Shown: positions 1 to 36,074 of the stretch, piece after piece
How the letters are laid out: every line of letters begins with the position of its first letter
Numbering within the stretch: position 1 is the stretch's first letter
From: Blastocystis sp. Blastoise
Lineage: Eukaryota; Protista; Bigyra: Opalinata
Length of the DNA stretch: 64,000 nucleotides
Assembly (NCBI GenBank): GCA_039096225.1
Contig: JBBPEB010000004.1
Span: 620,001 to 684,000 of the forward strand
Direction of reading: 5' to 3'
Translations under genes and position numbers: made by a program
The notes under the pieces: model-generated
What the model was told of the DNA's origin: nothing
Seen by the model: only the letters and a program-made list of their open reading frames with translations
Databases searched by the model: none

Positions 1-3000
1 TACTAATTTATCTATTATTTCTACTCATGAAAATATTCCTACTGTTAACATTACACAATCTAATTCTACTGTTTTAAATACTTCTGAATCTACTAATTTA
101 ATGAATTCTTCTAATGCTATTGATTCTTCTGCTTTTGTTGATTCTACTAATTCTATTTATTCTTCTGCTTCTATGGTTTCTTCTAATGCTCTTGATTCTT
201 CTGCTCCTATGGATTCTTCTTTTTCTATGGATTCTTCTGATTCTATAAACTCTCCTGATGCTATAAATTCTCCTGAATCTTCTGATTCTCCTCCTACTCC
301 TACACTTAGTCAATTACTACACAATAGAATATTCCCAAATGATACGAATCCTCCTTCTTGGGCAAGAAATCCTACACTAGAACTATCTCCTTCTTTATCT
401 ACATCTTCAAATACTACTATAATAGATACTGCTACAATTACAAATAATACTCCTATTGGAAATGAAATTATTCATCCTTCTATACAAACTACCTCCCTTT
501 TATCCTCTGAAGATGAACCTATTTCTATCAATTTAAATAATACCGAACAAGAGGATCAAGATATATATACGAATTCTGATTCTAATATAGAAATACCTAT
601 ACTTACTCCTAATGATATAATAGATGAAAATGAGATTCCTACAAATGAAACTATACTAAATACTATTGAAAATAATGAATTTATTCTTTCTTTTCCTACT
701 AATATATATACTATTACTTCTCCTCCTAAAGATTTTCCTACTAAATTTAATTGGCTTTTCCCGGCAAAACCTGAATTTCTAATTGGTTATAACACAATAA
801 AAAAACATAAAAATGGAAAGAAATGGAATAATATAGAATCCTTAAAGGAATTTATAAATCACTTCACTTTAATGTTTATCTACGAGAAAAGAAAAAATAG
901 GCCTAGAATTCAAAAAAGAATTACCCGCCAAAAAGCATTCTCCATGTTATTCCCTCAGTCAAGTGTGAATACACTGTTCTACTTACTACGAACTCTCAGA
1001 AATATTTATTCAAATAAACATAGAAATTCTAGTGCTCCAATAAATGAAGTAGCGAAACAAAATGAAATCCCTATACAAGAAAGAATAACTCCAAGTGATA
1101 CAACAAATAACTATATACAAAATGAAATTGAGGATAATACACATACTAATATGGGTACCTTTTTATCTCCTGTTCCTTCTGATTCTATAACTACTATTGA
1201 ACCTACTATTCCTTCTATCTCAAATTCTATAATTAATTCTAATTCTATTCCTATACATATTTCTTCTTCTTCTACAAATACTACAAATAATATTGATACT
1301 CCTATTATCATGAATACTACTATAAATCCAGATGATCATACTATAATAGAATCTTCTATATCTATAGAATCTCCTATTACAGTCAATATTTCTTCTACTA
1401 TAGAATCTCCTATATCTATAGAATCTCCTTCTAATATAGATTCAACAAACTTATCTTCTTCTATGAATATAGATCAAATAAATACCAATATAATAAACAA
1501 TACTATTATATCTTCTCCTTCTATAAATAATACTCAATTGTCTCCTAATAGTTCTATAGAAAATATAGATATGGAATTAGATATAGATATTAATAGTATT
1601 CCTTCTACTTTGAATACTATCGATTCTAATACAAATAATATTAATCAGCAAAAGGAATCTATCCATAAGGATTTAGTAAATAATACTATGAATATTACTA
1701 CAAACAAGGAGATTACTACATCTATAACTAATGAAGAAGAAAATACACAAAATAAGAGAAATACTATTAATCTTGATGAAACTAATACTCAAATGAATAA
1801 TACAACTACAATACAGAATCGAAATGAATACTATGATGTATCTTCTGATGAATCGATAATTAATATTTCTTCTACATCCACTTCAACTACTACCTCTCCT
1901 ATGAATTCTCCTATTCCTCTTGAAAATCATATAAGTCTCTCGAATATAGATTTTAATTTTACTCCACTTAATTCTACTCAAAAAGACATAAATGGATCTA
2001 AGAAGACTACTACAGAAACTACTACTACTATAGAAACTACTACTACTCCTCTTCCTATCAATACGAATGAAATTTTAAACAATAATAATACTATAGATAT
2101 TGATATAGATATAGATCAAAACATGAGTAATTCTGAAACAAATACTCCTATGAATACTATGGAAATACAAGAAGAAATAGCTTCTACTACTATGAATACT
2201 AATAATGATACTATGATGGATATTGAATCTTCTAATACTCAAGAAAATACTTCTACAAATAATTCAACTCAAAAGAATAAAAAGAATTCTACACAAAAAG
2301 GAAATAGAAATAAGAATACTAAGAATAAATCAAAATATGATGATTATATAAAGGCTCCTCGAATTCCTAATACTGAAGATCTCCTTTCTACTTACTCTCC
2401 TATTAATATTCAGAAAACTATACAATTCTCAAAAACTATCAAAGTAGATAATACTCCTAAAAGACGACTTTCTTCCATGGCTATACATAAATTAGGAAAT
2501 TGGAAAAGTTTCATTAGATTTAACAAATTTATAGAAGATAAACTCATACCTCTTGTTACTCCTTTCCCTAACTCCTCTGATGAATCGAATACTATACAGA
2601 TGAATAACGAAATGATTAATTCCTTCAATAATATATGTGATTATATTCAAAATGAACTTTATAACTGGATATATAATAATTCTATTCCTACTTATAGATC
2701 TTGGCATGATAATAATCTCAATAACAACAGTTCTATTAAGAAATATAATACTATATACAGAAAGAATAATAGTTATTCTCCTTCTCAAAGGAATAACTAT
2801 AATGATAAGAATTCTTCAAATAAATATTCTTATGCTGGAAAAAATAGAAATAGCAATTCATATAGATCAAATAACCAATATAGAAACTTAAAGAAAACAT
2901 ATACTAGAAAGAATAATCAATATAGAAAGAAGTATATGGATATGCATGATATTTCTCAAAATAATCGCGGTTATGGTCAAAATCAAAACTATACTGGTTC

Positions 3001-6000
3001 TTCTCCTAATAATCTTCAGAATACTACTAATAATACGGATGCTATGAATACTCATGATATTTCTCAGAATAATCATGGGAATACTCAAAATCGATATGAT
3101 ACTCAAAATATTCCTGGAAATAATCATGATTATAATCAACATAGATATAATAGAAGAAAGAATAATTATAATCATCCTATAAACAATTATAGTAATAAAA
3201 ACAAATATAAAAAGAATAAAAAATATAAGAACTATATGGATTTAAGTCCTTCTACTACTACTACTACTAATCGATCTACTACTATAAATGGTACTACTCC
3301 CTCTACTGATACTACTTCTCCTTCTACTGCTTCTCCTCCTACTACTTCCCCTCCTCCTACTACTACTACTCCTACTAATAATACTAACACTATACATATG
3401 AATAATAATTTCAAACAAACGAATGATGATTTCTTTGATAATAATCCTTTCAGAAAATCTACGGATAATGAAATTGAAGCTTTAAAGAAATACTATAATA
3501 ATCTAAAAAGTAATCTAGATACTCTAAAATACGATTTGAATCATACTATATTACCTAATATTCCTGAAACTGAATCCTATACTATCTCTTCTACTCTTTC
3601 TGAGTCTATCCTTAATTGGAAAAATAAACTACAATCTATTACACTCTTTGATGAAGATGAAGAATTAAAAATAAATATATTAAATATCTTACAGAAAGAT
3701 AATGAAAATAATAATACTCCTCTACTTACTCTAGAACAATGGAAAGAGATATTAAATCTTATAATGAATGAGATAGAATCATGCTTATGGAATATTAACC
3801 AACTTAAAGAAGCTAAAATAAGAATTACTTCTATTAATGATGCTAAGAAAATACAATCCGAATTTGATAAGAATACTAAAGCTTTCTTAAGAAGTAAAGT
3901 ATTCTCTAAAACTACTCCTAGATATTGTGAAATACCTTCTAAGGATTTACAAGAACAATTTACGAAACTATATGATTCACAAGAAACTTCAGATAATATA
4001 TTACTTCCAGATATTATAAAATCAAATACTAAACAATTACTAAATCCTCCTGCCCTTAATAAGATAACCTATGAAAGAATTAGACATGCATTAAAATTTT
4101 TACCAAATAACAGTACTCCTGGTCCTAATGGTCTCCCTTATGAAGTTTACAAATACTCCTCTTCTGCTTGTTCTCTATTGGCTTATATATTAGAAATATG
4201 TCGTTCGAATGGTATTACTCTAAAATCTTGGAGTTCCTCTATCACTTGCCTACTAGACAAAAATAAATCGGATCCTAGTAGCTTAGGAAACTGGAGACCT
4301 TTGGCTTTACAAAATACTGAATCAAAAATACTTTCTTCTATAATGGTTACCTACATGAATGAACTAAACAATAAACAAAACTTTATGTCAAAATATCAAA
4401 AAGGATTTATATCTGGAATACCTGGTTGTGAAGAACTTAATTTCATACTACAAAACTACATAGCTAACTTTAAACTATCTAGAAGAGCTAAAACTGCTGC
4501 CTATTTTACTTTCCTCGACTTGGAGAAGGCCTATGATACGGTACCTCAAAGATTAATGCATCAAATTCTTCAATATATGAACTTCCCTATAGACTTCAGA
4601 AATATTATTCTATCCTTATACTCTTCTGCTAATACTGTTATAAGATTAACCAAAAATTCATATACAGATCCTATATACTTAAAGCGTGGAATAAGACAAG
4701 GTGATCCCCTATCTCCTCTTCTATTCAATATTATACTTAATCCTTTATTGAATTACCTGAACAATAATCAAGCCATGATGATGAATATTAAAGATAACAC
4801 TACTCCTAATAATCCTATTGTTATATCAGAAAGTAATGCTTATGCTTATGCAGATGATATCGTCCTGCTAGCTAACAATAAAGAAGATACGGAAGTTCTT
4901 TTAGGAAAGGTAAAAGAAATACTTAATATATATCATATGAAACTATCGGTTAATAAATGTAAGTGTTTAGCGATGAAATATTCCAATGATGGAAATAGAA
5001 AACTTACGTATACTCCTCCTCCTCCTACTTATAATAATGAAGTGATTACTCTACTTAAAGATACTGAAATCCAAAGATATTTAGGATGTCCTATGGGTGA
5101 ATCCATTACTAAACGAAGAGAATTCTGGGTGAATACGTTAGATGAAATCAAAGAAAAAATAAATTCTTTAAATACTATTCCTATTAGTCCTCATCAAAAA
5201 TTAATAACTCTTCGTCAATATATTATTCCTTGTATTGAATTCTTGGCTAGAAATGGTGATACTAATATACTTAAAATAAAAGAACTGGATGTACTAATAA
5301 GAAATAATGTTAAGAATTGGAATGGATGTTCTTCTGTCTGGCCTAAAGACTTTTATAGCACTTCAATACGAGATGGTGGACTTGGTGTTACTTCGTTGTT
5401 AGATAGGTACTATATTGGTAAAGCTTCTCTACTGGTAAGAATGGCTAATTCAAATGATATAAATATTAGAAATACTTTATATTATGCTCTTAGATATACT
5501 ACTCTACAAAATTCTCTATATGTGATTAATGATCCAATAAACTATATGAGAGGCCATATTCCTACTGAAATCCCTGAAACTAGAAAGAAAGATTTGGTAT
5601 TCTTTAATCTATCTATCAACAATATTAACAAACCCTTAAAAGCAAAGAAAGAAAATAATACTATTATTCCTCTAGATATAGACTTTACTACACTGAACCA
5701 TCCCTTCCCTTATATAAGAAAAGCAATTGATGCTATAGTTGCTTTAAACATGGACATATGTTACTATGAAAATAATCCGAAAAATGGAGCTGGAATAAGA
5801 ATAAGAAGTACTGATAATAGTATATCGAAATTTATAGAAGCGAAAGATGTGAAACGTAAGATGTGTAAATTATTAAATGAATCTTTGAAAATAAGACATG
5901 CTTCTATGCTGAAAGAATACTCCTATTTGCAATATACTAAATATTTGAATAATAATATATCGTGTAACAAATGGATATACAAAACAAAACATATTAATCC

Positions 6001-6796
6001 TTCAAAATACTGTGCCTTATTGAATCTTCGAATGAGAACCCTATATACTGGTGAGATGGCTTATAGAAGACAAGATCCGAAAGGAAAGAAACCTACTCTA
6101 CATGATACTGTCGCTTTATGTCCTTATTGTTTGAAAACTAAAAATGAATCAAGAATACATAGTCAAACACACATCATGACTACTTGTGCTAGAATCTCTA
6201 GAAATGAAAATGGACACGATCTGATTAGCAAAAGACATAATGAAATACGAGAATGTTTAACTAGATCTTTGGCAAAAGCTCTTCCTTATACTATTTATAA
6301 AGTCAATCAAGAAAAATCAATGAATACTATTCTATATGATGGTAAGAATAAAGAGGAATGGGCTAATCGTCGTCCAGATATTATAATTACAAGTGAGAAA
6401 GAAATAAGAATGGTAGAAATTGGTGTTACTTATGAACAAGTAGATGGAACTCGTGATACTATCTTAGAAATGAAACATACTAAAGATCATTCATATGATG
6501 AAGCTATACAAAAATTACAACATGATTTCCCTAATAAACAAATCTCCTACTATACTGTTATACTTGGTGCCTCTGGGACAATTCCTGAATCTACTATTCA
6601 TAATATATCTCAAGTCTCAAAACTCAAAGGAAGATACTTATACTTTTTAATATCAAAAATTAATGATATAGTCTTAGAATGGGCCTATAAGTATTGGAGA
6701 CTATCTCTTTCTGATTCTAGACTAATTACAAAAAATATTTCTAGACTACATTCTTCTGCTGCTCATATTGAACTAACTCAACGAAATATTGAATAA
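1..6796 (+). CDS. Retrotransposon polyprotein, copy 1 (5'-partial): low-complexity N-terminus, reverse transcriptase, CCHC knuckle, REL endonuclease
   Basis: PGPNGLPY, NWRPLAL, FLDLEKAYDTV, GIRQGDPLSPLLF, YADD, RYLG, GGLG; CPYC..H...C; RHN; RPDIII..VEIGV; no stops. Confidence 0.95.
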   Translation, partial: TNLSIISTHENIPTVNITQSNSTVLNTSESTNLMNSSNAIDSSAFVDSTNSIYSSASMVSSNALDSSAPMDSSFSMDSSDSINSPDAINSPESSDSPPTPTLSQLLHNRIFPNDTNPPSWARNPTLELSPSLSTSSNTTIIDTATITNNTPIGNEIIHPSIQTTSLLSSEDEPISINLNNTEQEDQDIYTNSDSNIEIPILTPNDIIDENEIPTNETILNTIENNEFILSFPTNIYTITSPPKDFPTKFNWLFPAKPEFLIGYNTIKKHKNGKKWNNIESLKEFINHFTLMFIYEKRKNRPRIQKRITRQKAFSMLFPQSSVNTLFYLLRTLRNIYSNKHRNSSAPINEVAKQNEIPIQERITPSDTTNNYIQNEIEDNTHTNMGTFLSPVPSDSITTIEPTIPSISNSIINSNSIPIHISSSSTNTTNNIDTPIIMNTTINPDDHTIIESSISIESPITVNISSTIESPISIESPSNIDSTNLSSSMNIDQINTNIINNTIISSPSINNTQLSPNSSIENIDMELDIDINSIPSTLNTIDSNTNNINQQKESIHKDLVNNTMNITTNKEITTSITNEEENTQNKRNTINLDETNTQMNNTTTIQNRNEYYDVSSDESIINISSTSTSTTTSPMNSPIPLENHISLSNIDFNFTPLNSTQKDINGSKKTTTETTTTIETTTTPLPINTNEILNNNNTIDIDIDIDQNMSNSETNTPMNTMEIQEEIASTTMNTNNDTMMDIESSNTQENTSTNNSTQKNKKNSTQKGNRNKNTKNKSKYDDYIKAPRIPNTEDLLSTYSPINIQKTIQFSKTIKVDNTPKRRLSSMAIHKLGNWKSFIRFNKFIEDKLIPLVTPFPNSSDESNTIQMNNEMINSFNNICDYIQNELYNWIYNNSIPTYRSWHDNNLNNNSSIKKYNTIYRKNNSYSPSQRNNYNDKNSSNKYSYAGKNRNSNSYRSNNQYRNLKKTYTRKNNQYRKKYMDMHDISQNNRGYGQNQNYTGSSPNNLQNTTNNTDAMNTHDISQNNHGNTQNRYDTQNIPGNNHDYNQHRYNRRKNNYNHPINNYSNKNKYKKNKKYKNYMDLSPSTTTTTNRSTTINGTTPSTDTTSPSTASPPTTSPPPTTTTPTNNTNTIHMNNNFKQTNDDFFDNNPFRKSTDNEIEALKKYYNNLKSNLDTLKYDLNHTILPNIPETESYTISSTLSESILNWKNKLQSITLFDEDEELKINILNILQKDNENNNTPLLTLEQWKEILNLIMNEIESCLWNINQLKEAKIRITSINDAKKIQSEFDKNTKAFLRSKVFSKTTPRYCEIPSKDLQEQFTKLYDSQETSDNILLPDIIKSNTKQLLNPPALNKITYERIRHALKFLPNNSTPGPNGLPYEVYKYSSSACSLLAYILEICRSNGITLKSWSSSITCLLDKNKSDPSSLGNWRPLALQNTESKILSSIMVTYMNELNNKQNFMSKYQKGFISGIPGCEELNFILQNYIANFKLSRRAKTAAYFTFLDLEKAYDTVPQRLMHQILQYMNFPIDFRNIILSLYSSANTVIRLTKNSYTDPIYLKRGIRQGDPLSPLLFNIILNPLLNYLNNNQAMMMNIKDNTTPNNPIVISESNAYAYADDIVLLANNKEDTEVLLGKVKEILNIYHMKLSVNKCKCLAMKYSNDGNRKLTYTPPPPTYNNEVITLLKDTEIQRYLGCPMGESITKRREFWVNTLDEIKEKINSLNTIPISPHQKLITLRQYIIPCIEFLARNGDTNILKIKELDVLIRNNVKNWNGCSSVWPKDFYSTSIRDGGLGVTSLLDRYYIGKASLLVRMANSNDINIRNTLYYALRYTTLQNSLYVINDPINYMRGHIPTEIPETRKKDLVFFNLSINNINKPLKAKKENNTIIPLDIDFTTLNHPFPYIRKAIDAIVALNMDICYYENNPKNGAGIRIRSTDNSISKFIEAKDVKRKMCKLLNESLKIRHASMLKEYSYLQYTKYLNNNISCNKWIYKTKHINPSKYCALLNLRMRTLYTGEMAYRRQDPKGKKPTLHDTVALCPYCLKTKNESRIHSQTHIMTTCARISRNENGHDLISKRHNEIRECLTRSLAKALPYTIYKVNQEKSMNTILYDGKNKEEWANRRPDIIITSEKEIRMVEIGVTYEQVDGTRDTILEMKHTKDHSYDEAIQKLQHDFPNKQISYYTVILGASGTIPESTIHNISQVSKLKGRYLYFLISKINDIVLEWAYKYWRLSLSDSRLITKNISRLHSSAAHIELTQRNIE

Positions 6797-7317
6797 TATA
6801 TATTACTATATGGAATAATATATACTACTAATTATCCTCTATAATACTTCTATTCATCCTCCATATACTATATTGAATATACTACTTCTACTTATACTAT
6901 ATTGATGAAATTTATCTACTACTTATCCTCTACATATTACAATGGATATTATATTAATAATTCTACTTTATATTATACTTACTATATATATCTACTCCCT
7001 ATCCTCTATATATTATATTGGATATATTACTTTTACTTGATTTTATAATTTACTACTTTTTATATATATCTTTTTATTGAAATCTTTTCTTTATATCTTA
7101 TTCTAATTCTATTTAATGAAAACTTATTTATACTGATTGAATTTATAATCAGCTCTGATTGAATATCTATATATTTATAGATTGAATTTTCTCTTTTTCT
7201 CTTACTTACTATTTATTAAACTCTTATCTTAAAAATATTACTTAAAAAATTATTCTACTACTTATTAACCTTTAATATTAATTAAATCAATTAAATTATA
7301 TTAATTACATATATATA

Positions 7318-7500
7318 GTCGTGATATGAAAGGTATATTGTACCTATACATCAGCTATATCCCAGAAATGCTTGGGAGGTGTTAAAATTGTGTTACTAGA
7401 TCTGGTATCAGTACACAAATCCCATTCAGAGAGTCCTATTGGTTATTTTAAGGTGCATATGAAATACATGTGTTGTGATATCCCCGTGGTAAAACATACT
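7318..7500 (+). other. Structured 3' UTR segment of the retrotransposon (series of hairpins); repeated at 15909-16091
   Basis: GC-richer island with stems AGGTA/TACCT, TCCCA/TGGGA, TTGTG..TACT/AGTACACAA and GCATATG/CATGTGT. Confidence 0.5.
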
Positions 7501-7627
7501 TAAACAAAACAAAATGAACAAAAGTTATTAAATGATATTTTAAATTTATTTTAATTTTTTTATGTTCTTTTTCTGTTTGTGTACCGTTCTCTCTGGTACA
7601 AATGGTTACTTTAATTGGCTAACACTT

Positions 7628-7662
7628 GGGGTTCGATCCCCCTATCAGGCGTTTCTTTTTTA
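7628..7662 (+). pseudogene. tRNA 3' fragment (T-arm, acceptor 3' strand, discriminator G; tRNA-Lys-like) plus T-run; probable target-site duplication
   Basis: GGGG-TTCGATC-CCCC-T-ATCAGGC-G then TTTCTTTTTT; B-box motif GGTTCGATCC; no matching GCCTGAT 5' strand upstream. Confidence 0.75.
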
Positions 7663-10600
7663 CATTTTTTTTATATCCTCATGCAATCAGCAATCCATTT
7701 TAGTAACAACGGTGAAGTTCCGGAGTCAAAACTCCAAGTTGATCTGAAGATCAGAGATAAATCTGGGTCTACGAACCTGGCGTCTTCTTCTGCTCCTAGC
7801 CCTAGCGATGAGAACAGTTTACAGATAAACGAGAAACGAATTAAATCTGTGGAAGATGAGAAAAACGAAAAACAAAAAAATTATGATGAAAATGGTGATC
7901 CAAGATCAAAATTGGTTTTTTCCGGATTTGAAATCCCACAAAACTCCGAGTTCTCCCGTGATTCTACTACTACTAAAATAGATCCTCAAAATAAACAAGA
8001 TTATTCTTTAAATACTAAAGAATTAATAGACTTATCTCTTACTGGTTCAACTACTACAACTACAAACAATTCTTCTAACTGGGTACTTTCTGAAAGTGAT
8101 ACCCTCTACGTAGATACTACTTCCTCGGCTAAGAAACGAATTATGTCTCCGATATCTACACAATACAAGTCTATTCGAAAAAGAGTGGATACTCCTTTGA
8201 ACCCTCCTCTTGACTCTTCTCTACAAGTGAATTCTGAACCTTTGAAACCTTCTACTGAAAATACTTCTGAAAAGAAAGATGAATCTTGGTCTTCTACTGG
8301 TTGGTCTTCTGATGCCTTTGCTAAGTCTTGGTCTACTAATGTAAACATTTGGATTGATTATGATGATCCTAAACAAAACGTGAAATCTACTCAAAAATCT
8401 ACTACCAATCTTGGACTTCCTACACAAAATACGACTCTAAATCAACAAAATGATGTACCTATGGTTATTTCGGTGGCTACAAACACTCTTAATGAAAATT
8501 CTACTACTATTATTTCTTCTAATGCGTTATCTACTCCTGAAAATGTGTCCTCTACAAAAGAATCCCTGTTGAACAATTCTACTAACGAATCTACTAATTT
8601 ATCTATTATTTCTACTCATGAAAATATTCCTACTGTTAACATTACACAATCTAATTCTACTGTTTTAAATACTTCTGAATCTACTAATTTAATGAATTCT
8701 TCTAATGCTATTGATTCTTCTGCTTTTGTTGATTCTACTAATTCTATTTATTCTTCTGCTTCTATGGTTTCTTCTAATGCTCTTGATTCTTCTGCTCCTA
8801 TGGATTCTTCTTTTTCTATGGATTCTTCTGATTCTATAAACTCTCCTGATGCTATAAATTCTCCTGAATCTTCTGATTCTCCTCCTACTCCTACACTTAG
8901 TCAATTACTACACAATAGAATATTCCCAAATGATACGAATCCTCCTTCTTGGGCAAGAAATCCTACACTAGAACTATCTCCTTCTTTATCTACATCTTCA
9001 AATACTACTATAATAGATACTGCTACAATTACAAATAATACTCCTATTGGAAATGAAATTATTCATCCTTCTATACAAACTACCTCCCTTTTATCCTCTG
9101 AAGATGAACCTATTTCTATCAATTTAAATAATACCGAACAAGAGGATCAAGATATATATACGAATTCTGATTCTAATATAGAAATACCTATACTTACTCC
9201 TAATGATATAATAGATGAAAATGAGATTCCTACAAATGAAACTATACTAAATACTATTGAAAATAATGAATTTATTCTTTCTTTTCCTACTAATATATAT
9301 ACTATTACTTCTCCTCCTAAAGATTTTCCTACTAAATTTAATTGGCTTTTCCCGGCAAAACCTGAATTTCTAATTGGTTATAACACAATAAAAAAACATA
9401 AAAATGGAAAGAAATGGAATAATATAGAATCCTTAAAGGAATTTATAAATCACTTCACTTTAATGTTTATCTACGAGAAAAGAAAAAATAGGCCTAGAAT
9501 TCAAAAAAGAATTACCCGCCAAAAAGCATTCTCCATGTTATTCCCTCAGTCAAGTGTGAATACACTGTTCTACTTACTACGAACTCTCAGAAATATTTAT
9601 TCAAATAAACATAGAAATTCTAGTGCTCCAATAAATGAAGTAGCGAAACAAAATGAAATCCCTATACAAGAAAGAATAACTCCAAGTGATACAACAAATA
9701 ACTATATACAAAATGAAATTGAGGATAATACACATACTAATATGGGTACCTTTTTATCTCCTGTTCCTTCTGATTCTATAACTACTATTGAACCTACTAT
9801 TCCTTCTATCTCAAATTCTATAATTAATTCTAATTCTATTCCTATACATATTTCTTCTTCTTCTACAAATACTACAAATAATATTGATACTCCTATTATC
9901 ATGAATACTACTATAAATCCAGATGATCATACTATAATAGAATCTTCTATATCTATAGAATCTCCTATTACAGTCAATATTTCTTCTACTATAGAATCTC
10001 CTATATCTATAGAATCTCCTTCTAATATAGATTCAACAAACTTATCTTCTTCTATGAATATAGATCAAATAAATACCAATATAATAAACAATACTATTAT
10101 ATCTTCTCCTTCTATAAATAATACTCAATTGTCTCCTAATAGTTCTATAGAAAATATAGATATGGAATTAGATATAGATATTAATAGTATTCCTTCTACT
10201 TTGAATACTATCGATTCTAATACAAATAATATTAATCAGCAAAAGGAATCTATCCATAAGGATTTAGTAAATAATACTATGAATATTACTACAAACAAGG
10301 AGATTACTACATCTATAACTAATGAAGAAGAAAATACACAAAATAAGAGAAATACTATTAATCTTGATGAAACTAATACTCAAATGAATAATACAACTAC
10401 AATACAGAATCGAAATGAATACTATGATGTATCTTCTGATGAATCGATAATTAATATTTCTTCTACATCCACTTCAACTACTACCTCTCCTATGAATTCT
10501 CCTATTCCTCTTGAAAATCATATAAGTCTCTCGAATATAGATTTTAATTTTACTCCACTTAATTCTACTCAAAAAGACATAAATGGATCTAAGAAGACTA

Positions 10601-13600
10601 CTACAGAAACTACTACTACTATAGAAACTACTACTACTCCTCTTCCTATCAATACGAATGAAATTTTAAACAATAATAATACTATAGATATTGATATAGA
10701 TATAGATCAAAACATGAGTAATTCTGAAACAAATACTCCTATGAATACTATGGAAATACAAGAAGAAATAGCTTCTACTACTATGAATACTAATAATGAT
10801 ACTATGATGGATATTGAATCTTCTAATACTCAAGAAAATACTTCTACAAATAATTCAACTCAAAAGAATAAAAAGAATTCTACACAAAAAGGAAATAGAA
10901 ATAAGAATACTAAGAATAAATCAAAATATGATGATTATATAAAGGCTCCTCGAATTCCTAATACTGAAGATCTCCTTTCTACTTACTCTCCTATTAATAT
11001 TCAGAAAACTATACAATTCTCAAAAACTATCAAAGTAGATAATACTCCTAAAAGACGACTTTCTTCCATGGCTATACATAAATTAGGAAATTGGAAAAGT
11101 TTCATTAGATTTAACAAATTTATAGAAGATAAACTCATACCTCTTGTTACTCCTTTCCCTAACTCCTCTGATGAATCGAATACTATACAGATGAATAACG
11201 AAATGATTAATTCCTTCAATAATATATGTGATTATATTCAAAATGAACTCTATAATTGGATATATAATAATTCTACTCCTACTTATAGATCTTGGCGTAA
11301 TAATAATCTCAATAACAACAGTTCTATTAAGAAATATAATACTATATACAGAAAGAATAATAGTTATTCTCCTTCTCAAAGGAATAACTATAATGATAAG
11401 AATTCTTCAAATAAATATTCTTATGCTGGAAAAAATAGAAATAGCAATTCATATAGATCAAATAACCAATATAGAAACTTAAAGAAAACATATACTAGAA
11501 AGAATAATCAATATAGAAAGAAGTATATGGATATGCATGATATTTCTCAAAATAATCGCGGTTATGGTCAAAATCAAAACTATACTGGTTCTTCTCCTAA
11601 TAATCTTCAGAATACTACTAATAATACGGATGCTATGAATACTCATGATATTTCTCAGAATAATCATGGGAATACTCAAAATCGATATGATACTCAAAAT
11701 ATTCCTGGAAATAATCATGATTATAATCAACATAGATATAATAGAAGAAAGAATAATTATAATCATCCTATAAACAATTATAGTAATAAAAACAAATATA
11801 AAAAGAATAAAAAATATAAGAACTATATGGATTTAAGTCCTTCTACTACTACTACTACTAATCGATCTACTACTATAAATGGTACTACTCCCTCTACTGA
11901 TACTACTTCTCCTTCTACTGCTTCTCCTCCTACTACTTCCCCTCCTCCTACTACTACTACTCCTACTAATAATACTAACACTATACATATGAATAATAAT
12001 TTCAAACAAACGAATGATGATTTCTTTGATAATAATCCTTTCAGAAAATCTACGGATAATGAAATTGAAGCTTTAAAGAAATACTATAATAATCTAAAAA
12101 GTAATCTAGATACTCTAAAATACGATTTGAATCATACTATATTACCTAATATTCCTGAAACTGAATCCTATACTATCTCTTCTACTCTTTCTGAGTCTAT
12201 CCTTAATTGGAAAAATAAACTACAATCTATTACACTCTTTGATGAAGATGAAGAATTAAAAATAAATATATTAAATATCTTACAGAAAGATAATGAAAAT
12301 AATAATACTCCTCTACTTACTCTAGAACAATGGAAAGAGATATTAAATCTTATAATGAATGAGATAGAATCATGCTTATGGAATATTAACCAACTTAAAG
12401 AAGCTAAAATAAGAATTACTTCTATTAATGATGCTAAGAAAATACAATCCGAATTTGATAAGAATACTAAAGCTTTCTTAAGAAGTAAAGTATTCTCTAA
12501 AACTACTCCTAGATATTGTGAAATACCTTCTAAGGATTTACAAGAACAATTTACGAAACTATATGATTCACAAGAAACTTCAGATAATATATTACTTCCA
12601 GATATTATAAAATCAAATACTAAACAATTACTAAATCCTCCTGCCCTTAATAAGATAACCTATGAAAGAATTAGACATGCATTAAAATTTTTACCAAATA
12701 ACAGTACTCCTGGTCCTAATGGTCTCCCTTATGAAGTTTACAAATACTCCTCTTCTGCTTGTTCTCTATTGGCTTATATATTAGAAATATGTCGTTCGAA
12801 TGGTATTACTCTAAAATCTTGGAGTTCCTCTATCACTTGCCTACTAGACAAAAATAAATCGGATCCTAGTAGCTTAGGAAACTGGAGACCTTTGGCTTTA
12901 CAAAATACTGAATCAAAAATACTTTCTTCTATAATGGTTACCTACATGAATGAACTAAACAATAAACAAAACTTTATGTCAAAATATCAAAAAGGATTTA
13001 TATCTGGAATACCTGGTTGTGAAGAACTTAATTTCATACTACAAAACTACATAGCTAACTTTAAACTATCTAGAAGAGCTAAAACTGCTGCCTATTTTAC
13101 TTTCCTCGACTTGGAGAAGGCCTATGATACGGTACCTCAAAGATTAATGCATCAAATTCTTCAATATATGAACTTCCCTATAGACTTCAGAAATATTATT
13201 CTATCCTTATACTCTTCTGCTAATACTGTTATAAGATTAACCAAAAATTCATATACAGATCCTATATACTTAAAGCGTGGAATAAGACAAGGTGATCCCC
13301 TATCTCCTCTTCTATTCAATATTATACTTAATCCTTTATTGAATTACCTGAACAATAATCAAGCCATGATGATGAATATTAAAGATAACACTACTCCTAA
13401 TAATCCTATTGTTATATCAGAAAGTAATGCTTATGCTTATGCAGATGATATCGTCCTGCTAGCTAACAATAAAGAAGATACGGAAGTTCTTTTAGGAAAG
13501 GTAAAAGAAATACTTAATATATATCATATGAAACTATCGGTTAATAAATGTAAGTGTTTAGCGATGAAATATTCCAATGATGGAAATAGAAAACTTACGT

Positions 13601-16218
13601 ATACTCCTCCTCCTCCTACTTATAATAATGAAGTGATTACTCTACTTAAAGATACTGAAATCCAAAGATATTTAGGATGTCCTATGGGTGAATCCATTAC
13701 TAAACGAAGAGAATTCTGGGTGAATACGTTAGATGAAATCAAAGAAAAAATAAATTCTTTAAATACTATTCCTATTAGTCCTCATCAAAAATTAATAACT
13801 CTTCGTCAATATATTATTCCTTGTATTGAATTCTTGGCTAGAAATGGTGATACTAATATACTTAAAATAAAAGAACTGGATGTACTAATAAGAAATAATG
13901 TTAAGAATTGGAATGGATGTTCTTCTGTCTGGCCTAAAGACTTTTATAGCACTTCAATACGAGATGGTGGACTTGGTGTTACTTCGTTGTTAGATAGGTA
14001 CTATATTGGTAAAGCTTCTCTACTGGTAAGAATGGCTAATTCAAATGATATAAATATTAGAAATACTTTATATTATGCTCTTAGATATACTACTCTACAA
14101 AATTCTCTATATGTGATTAATGATCCAATAAACTATATGAGAGGCCATATTCCTACTGAAATCCCTGAAACTAGAAAGAAAGATTTGGTATTCTTTAATC
14201 TATCTATCAACAATATTAACAAACCCTTAAAAGCAAAGAAAGAAAATAATACTATTATTCCTCTAGATATAGACTTTACTACACTGAACCATCCCTTCCC
14301 TTATATAAGAAAAGCAATTGATGCTATAGTTGCTTTAAACATGGACATATGTTACTATGAAAATAATCCGAAAAATGGAGCTGGAATAAGAATAAGAAGT
14401 ACTGATAATAGTATATCGAAATTTATAGAAGCGAAAGATGTGAAACGTAAGATGTGTAAATTATTAAATGAATCTTTGAAAATAAGACATGCTTCTATGC
14501 TGAAAGAATACTCCTATTTGCAATATACTAAATATTTGAATAATAATATATCGTGTAACAAATGGATATACAAAACAAAACATATTAATCCTTCAAAATA
14601 CTGTGCCTTATTGAATCTTCGAATGAGAACCCTATATACTGGTGAGATGGCTTATAGAAGACAAGATCCGAAAGGAAAGAAACCTACTCTACATGATACT
14701 GTCGCTTTATGTCCTTATTGTTTGAAAACTAAAAATGAATCAAGAATACATAGTCAAACACACATCATGACTACTTGTGCTAGAATCTCTAGAAATGAAA
14801 ATGGACACGATCTGATTAGCAAAAGACATAATGAAATACGAGAATGTTTAACTAGATCTTTGGCAAAAGCTCTTCCTTATACTATTTATAAAGTCAATCA
14901 AGAAAAATCAATGAATACTATTCTATATGATGGTAAGAATAAAGAGGAATGGGCTAATCGTCGTCCAGATATTATAATTACAAGTGAGAAAGAAATAAGA
15001 ATGGTAGAAATTGGTGTTACTTATGAACAAGTAGATGGAACTCGTGATACTATCTTAGAAATGAAACATACTAAAGATCATTCATATGATGAAGCTATAC
15101 AAAAATTACAACATGATTTCCCTAATAAACAAATCTCCTACTATACTGTTATACTTGGTGCCTCTGGGACAATTCCTGAATCTACTATTCATAATATATC
15201 TCAAGTCTCAAAACTCAAAGGAAGATACTTATACTTTTTAATATCAAAAATTAATGATATAGTCTTAGAATGGGCCTATAAGTATTGGAGACTATCTCTT
15301 TCTGATTCTAGACTAATTACAAAAAATATTTCTAGACTACATTCTTCTGCTGCTCATATTGAACTAACTCAACGAAATATTGAATAATATATATTACTAT
15401 ATGGAATAATATATACTACTAATTATCCTCTATAATACTTCTATTCATCCTCCATATACTATATTGAATATACTACTTCTACTTATACTATATTGATGAA
15501 ATTTATCTACTACTTATCCTCTACATATTACAATGGATATTATATTAATAATTCTACTTTATATTATACTTACTATATATATCTACTCCCTATCCTCTAT
15601 ATATTATATTGGATATATTACTTTTACTTGATTTTATAATTTACTACTTTTTATATATATCTTTTTATTGAAATCTTTTCTTTATATCTTATTCTAATTC
15701 TATTTAATGAAAACTTATTTATACTGATTGAATTTATAATCAGCTCTGATTGAATATCTATATATTTATAGATTGAATTTTCTCTTTTTCTCTTACTTAC
15801 TATTTATTAAACTCTTATCTTAAAAATATTACTTAAAAAATTATTCTACTACTTATTAACCTTTAATATTAATTAAATCAATTAAATTATATTAATTACA
15901 TATATATAGTCGTGATATGAAAGGTATATTGTACCTATACATCAGCTATATCCCAGAAATGCTTGGGAGGTGTAAAAATTGTGTTACTAGATCTGGTATC
16001 AGTACACAAATCCCATTCAGAGAGTCCTATTGGTTATTTTAAGGTGCATATGAAATACATGTGTTGTGATATCCCCGTGGTAAAACATACTTAAACAAAA
16101 CAAAATGAACAAAAGTTATTAAATGATATTTTAAATTTATTTTAATTTTTTTATGTTCTTTTTCTGTTTGTGTACCGTTCTCTCTGGTACAAATGGTTAC
16201 TTTAATTGGCTAACACTT
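7663..16218 (+). mobile_element. Non-LTR retrotransposon, REL type, copy 2, full length (~8.56 kb)
   Basis: Complete ORF plus ~830-bp 3' UTR, flanked by identical 35-bp blocks at 7628-7662 and 16219-16253. Confidence 0.93.
7681..15387 (+). CDS. Retrotransposon polyprotein, copy 2, 2568 aa from the first ATG (RT, CCHC, REL endonuclease)
   Basis: Uninterrupted ORF with the same motifs as copy 1; the track start at 7615 is a TTG, first ATG is 7681 (MQSAIHF). Confidence 0.95.
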   Translation: MQSAIHFSNNGEVPESKLQVDLKIRDKSGSTNLASSSAPSPSDENSLQINEKRIKSVEDEKNEKQKNYDENGDPRSKLVFSGFEIPQNSEFSRDSTTTKIDPQNKQDYSLNTKELIDLSLTGSTTTTTNNSSNWVLSESDTLYVDTTSSAKKRIMSPISTQYKSIRKRVDTPLNPPLDSSLQVNSEPLKPSTENTSEKKDESWSSTGWSSDAFAKSWSTNVNIWIDYDDPKQNVKSTQKSTTNLGLPTQNTTLNQQNDVPMVISVATNTLNENSTTIISSNALSTPENVSSTKESLLNNSTNESTNLSIISTHENIPTVNITQSNSTVLNTSESTNLMNSSNAIDSSAFVDSTNSIYSSASMVSSNALDSSAPMDSSFSMDSSDSINSPDAINSPESSDSPPTPTLSQLLHNRIFPNDTNPPSWARNPTLELSPSLSTSSNTTIIDTATITNNTPIGNEIIHPSIQTTSLLSSEDEPISINLNNTEQEDQDIYTNSDSNIEIPILTPNDIIDENEIPTNETILNTIENNEFILSFPTNIYTITSPPKDFPTKFNWLFPAKPEFLIGYNTIKKHKNGKKWNNIESLKEFINHFTLMFIYEKRKNRPRIQKRITRQKAFSMLFPQSSVNTLFYLLRTLRNIYSNKHRNSSAPINEVAKQNEIPIQERITPSDTTNNYIQNEIEDNTHTNMGTFLSPVPSDSITTIEPTIPSISNSIINSNSIPIHISSSSTNTTNNIDTPIIMNTTINPDDHTIIESSISIESPITVNISSTIESPISIESPSNIDSTNLSSSMNIDQINTNIINNTIISSPSINNTQLSPNSSIENIDMELDIDINSIPSTLNTIDSNTNNINQQKESIHKDLVNNTMNITTNKEITTSITNEEENTQNKRNTINLDETNTQMNNTTTIQNRNEYYDVSSDESIINISSTSTSTTTSPMNSPIPLENHISLSNIDFNFTPLNSTQKDINGSKKTTTETTTTIETTTTPLPINTNEILNNNNTIDIDIDIDQNMSNSETNTPMNTMEIQEEIASTTMNTNNDTMMDIESSNTQENTSTNNSTQKNKKNSTQKGNRNKNTKNKSKYDDYIKAPRIPNTEDLLSTYSPINIQKTIQFSKTIKVDNTPKRRLSSMAIHKLGNWKSFIRFNKFIEDKLIPLVTPFPNSSDESNTIQMNNEMINSFNNICDYIQNELYNWIYNNSTPTYRSWRNNNLNNNSSIKKYNTIYRKNNSYSPSQRNNYNDKNSSNKYSYAGKNRNSNSYRSNNQYRNLKKTYTRKNNQYRKKYMDMHDISQNNRGYGQNQNYTGSSPNNLQNTTNNTDAMNTHDISQNNHGNTQNRYDTQNIPGNNHDYNQHRYNRRKNNYNHPINNYSNKNKYKKNKKYKNYMDLSPSTTTTTNRSTTINGTTPSTDTTSPSTASPPTTSPPPTTTTPTNNTNTIHMNNNFKQTNDDFFDNNPFRKSTDNEIEALKKYYNNLKSNLDTLKYDLNHTILPNIPETESYTISSTLSESILNWKNKLQSITLFDEDEELKINILNILQKDNENNNTPLLTLEQWKEILNLIMNEIESCLWNINQLKEAKIRITSINDAKKIQSEFDKNTKAFLRSKVFSKTTPRYCEIPSKDLQEQFTKLYDSQETSDNILLPDIIKSNTKQLLNPPALNKITYERIRHALKFLPNNSTPGPNGLPYEVYKYSSSACSLLAYILEICRSNGITLKSWSSSITCLLDKNKSDPSSLGNWRPLALQNTESKILSSIMVTYMNELNNKQNFMSKYQKGFISGIPGCEELNFILQNYIANFKLSRRAKTAAYFTFLDLEKAYDTVPQRLMHQILQYMNFPIDFRNIILSLYSSANTVIRLTKNSYTDPIYLKRGIRQGDPLSPLLFNIILNPLLNYLNNNQAMMMNIKDNTTPNNPIVISESNAYAYADDIVLLANNKEDTEVLLGKVKEILNIYHMKLSVNKCKCLAMKYSNDGNRKLTYTPPPPTYNNEVITLLKDTEIQRYLGCPMGESITKRREFWVNTLDEIKEKINSLNTIPISPHQKLITLRQYIIPCIEFLARNGDTNILKIKELDVLIRNNVKNWNGCSSVWPKDFYSTSIRDGGLGVTSLLDRYYIGKASLLVRMANSNDINIRNTLYYALRYTTLQNSLYVINDPINYMRGHIPTEIPETRKKDLVFFNLSINNINKPLKAKKENNTIIPLDIDFTTLNHPFPYIRKAIDAIVALNMDICYYENNPKNGAGIRIRSTDNSISKFIEAKDVKRKMCKLLNESLKIRHASMLKEYSYLQYTKYLNNNISCNKWIYKTKHINPSKYCALLNLRMRTLYTGEMAYRRQDPKGKKPTLHDTVALCPYCLKTKNESRIHSQTHIMTTCARISRNENGHDLISKRHNEIRECLTRSLAKALPYTIYKVNQEKSMNTILYDGKNKEEWANRRPDIIITSEKEIRMVEIGVTYEQVDGTRDTILEMKHTKDHSYDEAIQKLQHDFPNKQISYYTVILGASGTIPESTIHNISQVSKLKGRYLYFLISKINDIVLEWAYKYWRLSLSDSRLITKNISRLHSSAAHIELTQRNIE

Positions 16219-16253
16219 GGGGTTCGATCCCCCTATCAGGCGTTTCTTTTTTA
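16219..16253 (+). pseudogene. Second tRNA 3' fragment plus T-run (probable target-site duplication)
   Basis: Identical to 7628-7662; identity between the units stops at 16253. Confidence 0.75.
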
Positions 16254-16348
16254 TCTTTATATTTTTGCATTTCCTAAGTTCAGTAGTGCATGTAGATGCC
16301 AATGGTGAAGTTGCGGAGTCAAAACTCCAAGTTGATCTCTTTTGATCA
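16254..16348 (+). mobile_element. Diverged relic homologous to the retrotransposon 5' end
   Basis: 16301-16338 matches 7708-7745 at 36/38 nt, at nearly the same distance (+2 nt) from the tRNA fragment; frame then stops. Confidence 0.6.
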
Positions 16349-35992: not shown

Positions 35993-36074
35993 GCACGGAT
36001 GTCCGAGTGGTCTAAGGAGCTACGTTAAGGCCGTAGTATGTTCGCATGCGCGGGTTCGAGTCCCGCTTCGTGCA
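35993..36074 (+). tRNA. tRNA-Leu (anticodon AAG)
   Basis: GCACGGA/TTCGTGC-A acceptor stem; CTACG-TTAAGGC-CGTAG anticodon arm; long variable arm; GCGGG-TTCGAGT-CCCGC T-arm; downstream T-run. Confidence 0.96.

What the first reader, a model, noticed from the sequence alone, without database searches (positions are those of the whole stretch)
7628..16253. Candidate tRNA-targeting REL retrotransposon whose long target duplication would preserve the tRNA and build head-to-tail arrays
Seen: both copies are followed by the same 35 bp, GGGGTTCGATCCCCCTATCAGGCG-TTTCTTTTTTA. This is tRNA positions ~50-73 plus a Pol III-type terminator. The T-stem breaks exactly at its first pair (T opposite T where A is expected), which marks the likely junction, and no tRNA 5' half lies between the copies. 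Known: REL-type non-LTR elements (R2, R4, NeSL, CRE/SLACS) are often specific for RNA genes and some make long TSDs; the AGGGG-TTCGA.C-CCCCTA pattern occurs in eukaryotic tRNA-Lys. Inference: staggered cuts in the T-stem and just past the terminator duplicate the tRNA 3' end. The upstream gene would stay functional and re-targetable, so copies stack with the oldest most 3'. This parallels the tRNA-restoring attP sites of phage integrases.
Basis: partly seen in the sequence, partly recalled or inferred. Interest (0 to 1): 0.88.

Follow-up and report, generated by a model that had tools for sequence, protein, structure and literature searches.

The report
tRNA-Lys-specific retrotransposon that regenerates its target
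An 8.6-kb jumping gene of a tortoise-gut Blastocystis inserts only into the T-arm of tRNA-Lys(UUU) genes, yet always leaves a complete tRNA gene in front of itself, so copies stack head to tail behind 5 of the 6 genes for this tRNA.

Summary

- **Host.** The genome is Blastocystis sp. "Blastoise" (tortoise isolate, 33.3 Mb, 23% GC).
- **What the window holds.** It holds two near-identical 8,567-nt non-LTR elements. Each has one 2,568-aa ORF with RT, a CCHC knuckle and a PD-(D/E)xK restriction-like endonuclease. Each is followed by tRNA-Lys(UUU) positions 50-73.
As predicted, the array starts with an intact tRNA-Lys gene, 940 nt upstream of window position 1.
- **Genome-wide specificity.** All 11 element 3' ends abut this 24-mer. 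5 of the 6 tRNA-Lys(UUU) genes head arrays, and no orphan tRNA 5' half exists.
- **Array order.** Young copies lie next to the tRNA and diverged ones lie distal.
- **A second family.** A family 43-48% identical does the same at tRNA-Phe(GAA), occupying 6 of 7 genes.
- **The correction.** That family and the C33 array show that the duplication ends exactly at tRNA position 73. The T-run is the element's own 5' end, so the duplication is 24 nt, not 35.
- **RNA evidence.** RNA-seq contigs show the element is transcribed. One contig shows it polyadenylated inside the tRNA fragment.

tRNA-specific RLE elements and long duplications were already known. A target-restoring element that occupies nearly all genes of a tRNA appears undescribed. 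First readers of this scan flagged the same two families on other pieces of this genome.

The parts
1..7627 (+). Copy 1 of the element (its last 7,627 of 8,567 nt). It starts 939 nt before the window, directly after the head tRNA-Lys(UUU) gene at G000:C13:618989-619060. The ORF stop is at 6794-6796 and the 3' UTR is 6797-7627.
   Evidence: Offset 8,591 and 6 mismatches versus copy 2. Head tRNA and junction. tblastn 99.9%.
7628..7651 (+). tRNA-Lys(UUU) positions 50-73 (T-stem 3 of 5 pairs, T-loop, acceptor 3' strand, discriminator). This is the target-derived fragment between copy 1 and copy 2.
   Evidence: Identical to the 3' end of all six intact tRNA-Lys genes.
7644..7644 (+). Poly(A) addition site of the element's mRNA, inside the tRNA fragment, after GGGGTTCGATCCCCCTA.
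   Evidence: One RNA-seq contig of run X1 ends here and continues with A25. No such DNA exists in the genome.
7652..16218 (+). Copy 2, a full-length element of 8,567 nt.
7652..7680 (+). T-rich 29-nt leader (TTTCTTTTTTACATTTTTTTT...). It is the element's own 5' end and sits where the head tRNA needs its Pol III terminator.
   Evidence: Identical after every head tRNA and every internal fragment of A-type copies. It differs from native flanks at C33 and C1/C10. The parallel case in family 2 is.
7681..15387 (+). Single ORF of 2,568 aa plus stop. The ATG lies 30 nt after the tRNA end.
9211..9630 (+). N-terminal block (aa 511-650). It is the only part outside RT-RLE conserved with the tRNA-Phe family (36% identity). 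It is a candidate target-binding domain of unknown fold.
   Evidence: No Pfam hit. The AF2 model is unusable.
12859..13677 (+). Reverse transcriptase domain (YADD at 13438-13449).
   Evidence: RVT_1 E=2.7e-32. R2 protein structures are the best PDB hits, E=1.7e-41.
14710..14778 (+). CCHC zinc knuckle, CPYC-x12-H-x5-C.
14959..15177 (+). Restriction-like endonuclease core: RRPD ... MVEIGV ... K ... GASGTIP.
   Evidence: Aligned to the R2 RLE (second stretch) and to RLE relatives.
15388..16218 (+). 3' UTR of copy 2 (831 nt), ending ...GGCTAACACTT.
   Evidence: No significant global fold.
16219..16242 (+). Second tRNA-Lys 50-73 fragment, at the end of copy 2.
16243..16345 (+). Remnant of the 5' end of an older, third type of family member: a T-rich leader plus about 14 codons, ..NGEVAESKLQVDL, then a stop.
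   Evidence: A 39-nt block 95% identical to element nt 56-94. A similar remnant follows the C14 array (L011).

Best explanation
This is a site-specific non-LTR retrotransposon of the restriction-like-endonuclease (R2-like) type. Its only target is the T-arm of tRNA-Lys(UUU) genes.

**Proposed steps.**
1. The endonuclease nicks the bottom strand between tRNA positions 49 and 50 (inferred).
2. The mRNA is polyadenylated inside the downstream tRNA fragment (shown), so its 3' end carries tRNA 50-66.
3. This tail pairs with the freed bottom strand and sets the exact start of reverse transcription (inferred).
4. The top strand is broken at the tRNA's 3' end, at 73/+1 (inferred).
5. Fill-in therefore duplicates tRNA 50-73, which is 24 nt (the duplication is shown).

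**Result.** The upstream copy of the 24 nt completes an intact tRNA gene. The element's T-rich first bases stand where that gene's Pol III terminator belongs. The regenerated tRNA is hit again, so full-length copies stack head to tail with the youngest next to the tRNA. A sister family works the same way on tRNA-Phe(GAA).
For: - **Architecture.** RVT_1; best PDB matches are R2 proteins; CCHC, PD, E and K motifs align with RLE relatives.
- **Specificity.** There are 17 exact 24-mers in 33 Mb: 6 intact tRNA-Lys genes and 11 element 3' ends.
- **Intact targets.** All six tRNA-Lys genes are 100% identical over 72 nt, and there are no orphan 5' halves.
- **Occupancy.** 5 of 6 genes head arrays.
- **Extent of the duplication.** Native flanks at C33, at C1/C10 and at all tRNA-Phe sites differ from the element's 5' end directly after G73.
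- **Second family.** It is 43-48% identical in protein and shows 15 exact 22-mers and 7 intact tRNA-Phe genes, 6 of them occupied.
- **RNA.** Depth is 50-fold uneven, adapters are present, and an A25 tail follows window 7644. That tail is not genome-encoded.
- **Separate insertions.** The two copies in the window differ at 6 sites, and each is identical to a copy on another contig.
- **Age order.** The 2.2% and roughly 10% diverged copies lie distal to the A copies.
- **Relatives elsewhere.** The sister clade in other AT-rich assemblies also sits on tRNA 3' ends. One unit carries a 36-nt tRNA 3' part at both ends.
Against: - No nick has been mapped, so the sequence cannot tell a staggered cut from an RNA-templated copy of tRNA 50-73.
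- The poly(A) site rests on one contig of a run whose RNA status is inferred.
- The RNA 5' end and the promoter are unknown.
- No zinc-finger or Myb target-binding domain was detected.
- Expression of the head tRNAs was not shown.
- The age-order evidence comes from only two or three arrays.
- The one empty tRNA-Lys site shares its downstream 1.5 kb with the C10 array end, which shows that rearrangements at these loci also occur.
Confidence: 0.6

Rival explanations
1. The target and first nick are the same, but the upstream 24 nt is not a staggered-cut duplication. It is copied from the element RNA. The template starts upstream, either in the preceding tRNA or fragment or as a tRNA-element co-transcript, possibly trimmed by tRNA 3' processing. 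The cDNA end then joins the target by homology, as R2 does with 28S co-transcripts.
For: - Every 5' junction is exact and full-length. No 5'-truncated copy lies next to any of the 11 occupied head tRNAs.
- One RNA-seq contig joins at least 255 nt of flank plus the tRNA 5' part to the 24-mer.
- The ATG lies only 30 nt behind the tRNA, leaving no room for an upstream promoter in the element.
Against: - The longest shown contig over the 5' region starts at 7687, and depth drops 40-fold right after the fragment. Abundant read-through RNA is therefore not evident.
- Pol III would stop at the T6 and T8 runs.
- No ribozyme family matches the 5' region.
- Internal array copies have no complete tRNA in front of them for processing.
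Confidence: 0.25
2. The tRNA is never cut. The element carries a tRNA-derived 24-nt tail as its own 3' end and inserts just behind the tRNA gene, at 73/+1.
For: - The final structure is identical under this model.
- Relatives are found directly downstream of tRNA 3' ends.
Against: - The observed polyadenylated mRNA stops at position 66 of the fragment, so 67-73 must come from the target. No copy carries an A-tail.
- Two families each bear the tail of their own target tRNA. A relative bears 36 nt of a third tRNA. This follows directly if the fragment is target DNA.
Confidence: 0.07
3. The arrays grew mainly by unequal crossing-over or local tandem duplication of one insertion, not by repeated insertion.
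For: - The two C10 copies are identical.
- The spacing is exactly 8,591 nt.
- Exchange between tRNA-Lys loci has happened: the C1 and C10 flanks are the same.
Against: - In the window's array the two copies differ at 6 sites, and each equals a copy on another contig.
- Mixed arrays contain different subfamilies in age order.
Confidence: 0.08

Closest known systems
tRNA-gene-specific RLE non-LTR elements of the NeSL group: NeSL-1_TV (tRNA-Pro), LIN15_SM (tRNA-Arg), LIN25_SM (tRNA-Glu). Source: Kojima & Jurka 2015, PMC4640811.
   Same: RT plus a C-terminal restriction-like endonuclease. Each family is specific for one tRNA gene, and the 3' junction is followed by the tRNA's 3' part.
   Different: - For LIN15_SM, the one family whose junction rows I read, the junction lies further 5' in the tRNA. 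Those rows show only 3' junctions, so they say nothing on whether a complete tRNA is restored.
- I did not see the tRNA-Pro or tRNA-Glu junctions.
- Here the junction is in the T-stem and an intact gene is always regenerated.
- Nearly all gene copies are occupied.
- The quick RT tree puts these elements in a separate clade from a Ulp1-bearing NeSL-like protein.
R2 (28S rDNA)
   Same: Single-ORF RT-CCHC-RLE architecture. R2 proteins are the best structural homologues. Strict site specificity; by general knowledge of R2, target sequence on the RNA guides priming.
   Different: - The target is a tRNA gene, not 28S.
- R2 inactivates the rDNA unit it enters; here the target is restored.
- No zinc-finger or Myb domain was detected and no HDV-like ribozyme.
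- It falls outside the R2-named clade in the RT tree.
- The ORF is more than twice as long.
R9 of bdelloid rotifers (126-bp duplication in 28S; Gladyshev & Arkhipova 2009, cited from my own knowledge and seen in reference lists) and reptile Utopia (20-bp TSD in U2; PMC4640811)
   Same: RLE elements whose second-strand break lies well downstream of the first, giving long target duplications. Tandem insertion is seen in Nasonia Utopia.
   Different: - The target differs.
- Here the duplication ends exactly at the gene's 3' end, so a complete functional unit is rebuilt and the element supplies the terminator.
- In the Nasonia wasps with strictly U2-specific Utopia, disrupted U2 genes outnumber intact ones.
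tRNA-restoring attP sites of phage and integrative-element integrases
   Same: Insertion into a tRNA gene, with the tRNA 3' part present at both ends so that the gene stays intact.
   Different: - Those use DNA recombination by tyrosine integrases, with an element-borne copy.
- Here insertion is by reverse transcription at a nick, in a eukaryote, and the distal fragment is target DNA.
Dictyostelid TRE5, TRE3, DGLT-A and NLTR elements, and yeast Ty1/Ty3 (PMC5006619)
   Same: They use tRNA genes as safe havens in compact genomes.
   Different: - Those integrate at set distances upstream or downstream through Pol III factors, not inside the gene.
- TRE elements use an APE endonuclease.
Dada DNA transposons (PMC3706591)
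   Same: They insert at a specific site inside particular tRNA genes.
   Different: - They use a DDE transposase and make 6-7 bp TSDs.
- The copies lie inside their target genes.
- They rely on hundreds of spare copies.

Membership tests
Non-LTR retrotransposon with restriction-like endonuclease (R2/NeSL/R4/CRE group) | Reverse transcriptase of the non-LTR type | tested here: met
   RVT_1 E=2.7e-32. phmmer finds R2 and L1 ORF2 structures.
Non-LTR retrotransposon with restriction-like endonuclease (R2/NeSL/R4/CRE group) | C-terminal CCHC knuckle followed by a PD-(D/E)xK endonuclease; no APE domain | tested here: met
   - CPYC..H..C at aa 2344-2366.
- RRPD, MVEIGV, K and GASGTIP motifs align with the R2 RLE and RLE relatives.
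- No Exo_endo_phos hit.
- Evidence is at motif level only; there is no structure or assay.
Non-LTR retrotransposon with restriction-like endonuclease (R2/NeSL/R4/CRE group) | No terminal repeats; insertion by TPRT with a precise 3' junction | tested here: inconclusive
   - No LTR or TIR was found among direct repeats.
- All 11 3' junctions are identical.
- TPRT itself cannot be tested here.
Non-LTR retrotransposon with restriction-like endonuclease (R2/NeSL/R4/CRE group) | N-terminal zinc-finger or Myb DNA-binding motifs | tested here: not met
   - No Pfam hit in aa 1-1700 at E<=1.
- There is only a 140-aa block conserved with family 2.
- Its fold is unresolved.
R2 clade proper | Insertion at the R2 site of 28S rDNA, and grouping with R2 in RT phylogeny | tested here: not met
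   - The target is tRNA-Lys.
- The quick tree separates it from the R2-named and zinc-finger clade, SH-aLRT 99.
NeSL/Utopia clade | Grouping with NeSL or Utopia RTs; often an N-terminal Ulp1 protease or an RNase H domain | tested here: inconclusive
   - No protease or RNase H domain is found in this ORF.
- Sister-clade relatives do have RNase H (L088) or a UCH-like ORF1 (L092).
- No labelled Repbase references were available, and the tree is a quick one.
Target-specific retrotransposon of a multicopy RNA gene | All or nearly all copies sit at one site of one gene family | tested here: met
   - 11 of 11 3' ends lie at tRNA-Lys 49/50.
- In family 2, all 8 sites where the 22-mer follows an element 3' end lie at one tRNA-Phe position, 50/51 or 51/52.

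The most novel reading that the evidence does not exclude
These elements belong to a so far unnamed clade of tRNA-restoring RLE retrotransposons in AT-rich protists. They would be the first eukaryotic retroelement counterpart of the tRNA-restoring attP.

- The duplication is tuned to end at the discriminator base.
- The element donates the Pol III terminator.
- The mRNA is polyadenylated within the target-derived segment, so every transcript carries its own primer-binding site for the next tRNA gene.
- Host and element would then be locked together: almost every gene for two essential tRNAs is expressed from an element-capped locus.
Probability: 0.35. Interest if true: 0.85.

Novelty: new variant of a known kind. 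Interest (0 to 1): 0.7.

Why it matters
**The problem the element solves.** Known elements that insert inside small-RNA genes survive because the host has spare copies. Here the target families are tiny, with 6 tRNA-Lys(UUU) and 7 tRNA-Phe(GAA) genes found, and almost fully occupied. Insertion therefore has to leave the gene working. The junctions show how that can be done with a 24-nt duplication and an element-borne terminator.

**What it offers.**
- It is a natural example of a retrotransposon insertion that leaves a complete target gene at a defined site. That is relevant to how second-strand cleavage position evolves in R2-like elements.
- It is also relevant to current efforts to use R2-type proteins for safe-harbour gene insertion.

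**For the host.** It adds the first described retrotransposon biology for Blastocystis. The genome paper mentions neither retrotransposons nor tRNAs.

Tried and rejected
- **Dictyostelid host.** I guessed this from the 25% GC and the Asn/Thr-rich ORF. A 99% identical NCBI protein from Blastocystis sp. Blastoise, and that strain's genome statistics, reject it.
- **HDV-like or other ribozyme at the 5' end.** No Rfam match at E<=1 in 7500-8400.
- **Structured 3' UTR.** z = -0.52, not different from shuffles.
- **N-terminal domains.** Pfam finds nothing. The protein atlas has no usable hit. The AF2 model of the conserved block has pLDDT 35, so no fold search was run.
- **35-bp TSD that includes the terminator.** Rejected.
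- **Full tRNA census with RF00005.** Only 63 of 1,505 candidates were scored, so this is not a census.
- **Fetching whole arrays.** C14 685-695 kb and most of the family-2 arrays were not read.
- **The C23 copy.** It is cut at element nt 3891 with unrelated DNA upstream and no tRNA nearby, so it says nothing about the 5' junction.
- **Other strains.** Runs X2 and X3 of the same study hold none of the element's words. This says only that near-identical copies are absent there.
Full report
**Observation.** The 24-mer GGGGTTCGATCCCCCTATCAGGCG is present twice in the window, at 7628 and 16219. None is expected by chance. Each copy is followed by TTTCTTTTTTA. The sequences in front of the two 24-mers are two copies of one element, offset by 8,591 nt, with 6 mismatches in 7,662 positions. 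ARAGORN sees no tRNA between them.

**Host.** The element's protein is 99% identical to KAK8810518.1 of Blastocystis sp. Blastoise. The genome has 33.3 Mb in 34 contigs. Its size fits the Russian-tortoise isolate Rus-B, which is listed at 33.3 Mb, 33 scaffolds and 23.1% GC (PMC10690189). That paper mentions neither retrotransposons nor tRNAs. My first guess of a dictyostelid was wrong.

**The element.**
- Each copy is 8,567 nt.
- One ORF of 2,568 aa starts 30 nt after the preceding tRNA sequence.
- It holds a non-LTR RT (RVT_1, E=2.7e-32).
- It also holds a CCHC knuckle and a PD-(D/E)xK endonuclease core, which align with the R2 RLE and with RLE relatives.
- R2 protein structures are the best PDB matches (E=1.7e-41).
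- The first 1,500 residues are mostly low-complexity and have no Pfam domain.

- The genome holds 17 exact 24-mers.
- Six are the 3' ends of intact, mutually identical tRNA-Lys(UUU) genes.
- The other eleven each follow an element 3' end.
- No element 3' end lies anywhere else, and no orphan tRNA 5' half exists.
- Five of the six tRNA genes are directly followed by an element. One, on C1, is empty.
- The array in the window starts with such a gene at C13:618989-619060, which ends 940 nt before window position 1. The window therefore shows tRNA - copy - fragment - copy - fragment.
- The tRNA begins GCCTGGT and has A49 where the element ends in T. The junction is therefore at 49/50.

**Extent of the duplication.** Three results speak against this.
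- In the C33 array, the flank after the last fragment reads ATTTCTTTTTATC. After the head tRNA the sequence reads TTTCTTTTTTACA, as in every A-type copy.
- In the sister family, the empty tRNA-Phe site and the array ends read ATTTCTTTTT.., whereas every element starts TAATTTTATTTTT.. directly after G73.
- (A/T)T(T/A)TCTTTTTAT is the usual trailer of tRNA genes here, including the tRNA-Leu gene in the window.

The duplicated segment is therefore tRNA 50-73 only, and the T-runs belong to the element's 5' end. In the window, the 11 bases after the second fragment open a roughly 100-nt remnant of an older family member.

**Second family.** A family with 43-48% protein identity in RT-RLE is about 10 kb long, with a 2,684-aa ORF and its ATG 33 nt after the tRNA. 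It is joined in the same way to tRNA-Phe(GAA). There are 15 exact 22-mers and 7 intact genes; 6 head arrays and 1 is empty. The junction is at 50/51 or 51/52. First readers of this scan had flagged this on other pieces of the genome, and I confirmed it.

**RNA.** Run X1, from the same study as the genome, holds 96% of the words. I take it to be RNA-seq for two reasons. Illumina adapters appear as loose ends. Depth over one and the same repeat is about 70 in the ORF's 5' part and 2,000-6,000 in the 3' part. One contig ends at window 7644, inside the tRNA fragment, and continues with 25 A. The genome has no such sequence. The mRNA therefore ends in tRNA 50-66 plus poly(A). Because 67-73 are missing from this RNA and no genomic copy carries an A-tail, the distal fragment must be target DNA. 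Reverse transcription must start internally, most simply by pairing of the nicked bottom strand with this tail. Another contig joins at least 255 nt of flank and tRNA 5' part to the 24-mer. The longest shown contig over the 5' region starts at 7687. Contigs cannot define RNA ends.

**How arrays form.**
- The eight A-type copies differ at 0-7 of about 5,290 aligned positions.
- The two copies in the window differ at 6 positions, and each is identical to a copy on another contig. This argues for separate insertions rather than local duplication.
- In mixed arrays the A copies are next to the tRNA, and the 2.2% and roughly 10% diverged B copies are distal (C29, C14).
- Older remnants follow at the far end.
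- This fits re-insertion into the regenerated head tRNA. The sample is small, with roughly a 1-in-20 chance under random placement by my rough count.
- Seven of the eight A copies keep the full ORF. C14-proximal has a 1-nt length change and a shorter open frame.

**Relatives.** No close protein relative exists outside this genome; the best is about 30% identical. A quick RT tree joins the two Blastocystis families (support 100). It places them beside (support 85) a clade (support 95) of elements on Logan contigs of 24-26% GC, apart from R2-named and zinc-finger-bearing proteins. Contigs L091, L093 and L098 begin inside a tRNA 3' end followed by a T-run. Unit L088/L089 carries a 36-nt tRNA 3' part at both ends. 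The habit thus seems older than these two families. The source organisms are unknown.

**Mechanism and what is not shown.** The target, the junctions, the 24-nt duplication, transcription and the poly(A) site are shown. The following are inferred:
- the two nick positions;
- priming by the tRNA-derived tail;
- terminator function of the element's T-runs;
- activity of the head tRNAs.

The main rival is that the upstream 24 nt is copied from an RNA that starts upstream and is joined by homology. The complete lack of 5'-truncated copies next to head tRNAs fits that model. It equally fits selection against insertions that lack the terminator.

**Comparison with what is known.**
- tRNA-specific RLE elements have been reported: NeSL-1_TV, LIN15_SM and LIN25_SM (PMC4640811).
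- Long duplications have been reported for R9 and reptile Utopia.
- Other elements that insert inside small-RNA genes were described as relying on high target copy number, as Dada does, or with disrupted target genes outnumbering intact ones, as in Nasonia Utopia.
- I found no description of a retrotransposon that rebuilds its tRNA target and occupies nearly all copies. The library is incomplete.

**Verdict.** The feature is real. It is a new variant of a known kind.

Noticed in passing
window 21023-25702 (-): A 1,559-aa ORF with Helitron_like_N and PIF1 helicase domains, so a Helitron Rep/Hel gene about 5 kb beyond the array.
   Followed up: partly
window 30449-31831 (+): A 460-aa ORF with a DDE_1 (pogo/Tigger-type) transposase domain. 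The array lies in a transposon-rich stretch.
   Followed up: no
window 26922-27599 and 28882-29359: Tandem repeats with periods of about 62-64 nt and 122 nt.
   Followed up: no
G000:C1:374876-376375 versus G000:C10:51010-52458: The only empty tRNA-Lys(UUU) gene (C1) has the same 1.5 kb downstream as the far end of the C10 array (97-100% identical with a 51-bp indel), while the upstream flanks differ. This may be ectopic exchange between tRNA-Lys loci, a segmental duplication, or a misjoin through the repeat.
   Followed up: partly
window 5500-7650 versus 7708-10283: RNA contig depth is 25-80 times higher over the last 2 kb of the element, with a peak at 7340-7523 in the 3' UTR, than over the ORF's 5' part. 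This could be 3' bias or a separate abundant 3' RNA.
   Followed up: no
window 8370-8858 and 9318-10270: Two low-depth joints in RNA contigs skip 487 and 951 nt of the low-complexity coding region, without GT..AG ends. They could be deletion variants or artefacts.
   Followed up: no
L001:2333-2475 (C1) and many contigs: A repeat of about 140 bp is present in more than 40 places at 75-99% identity. A second family of about 140 bp occurs in long tandem clusters. They may be MITE- or satellite-like.
   Followed up: no
L092:3-2780: In a related element from another assembly, the ORF in front of the RT ORF carries a ubiquitin-hydrolase-like NxGNTCYLNS motif. P0130 likewise couples UCH with RT.
   Followed up: no
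G000:C23:741312-745971 (-): A 4.5% diverged copy is cut off at element nt 3891 and abuts unrelated DNA, with no tRNA in the 4.4 kb upstream.
   Followed up: partly
window 35993-36074 (+): A tRNA-Leu(AAG) gene with the trailer TATCTTTTTAT and no element attached.
   Followed up: yes
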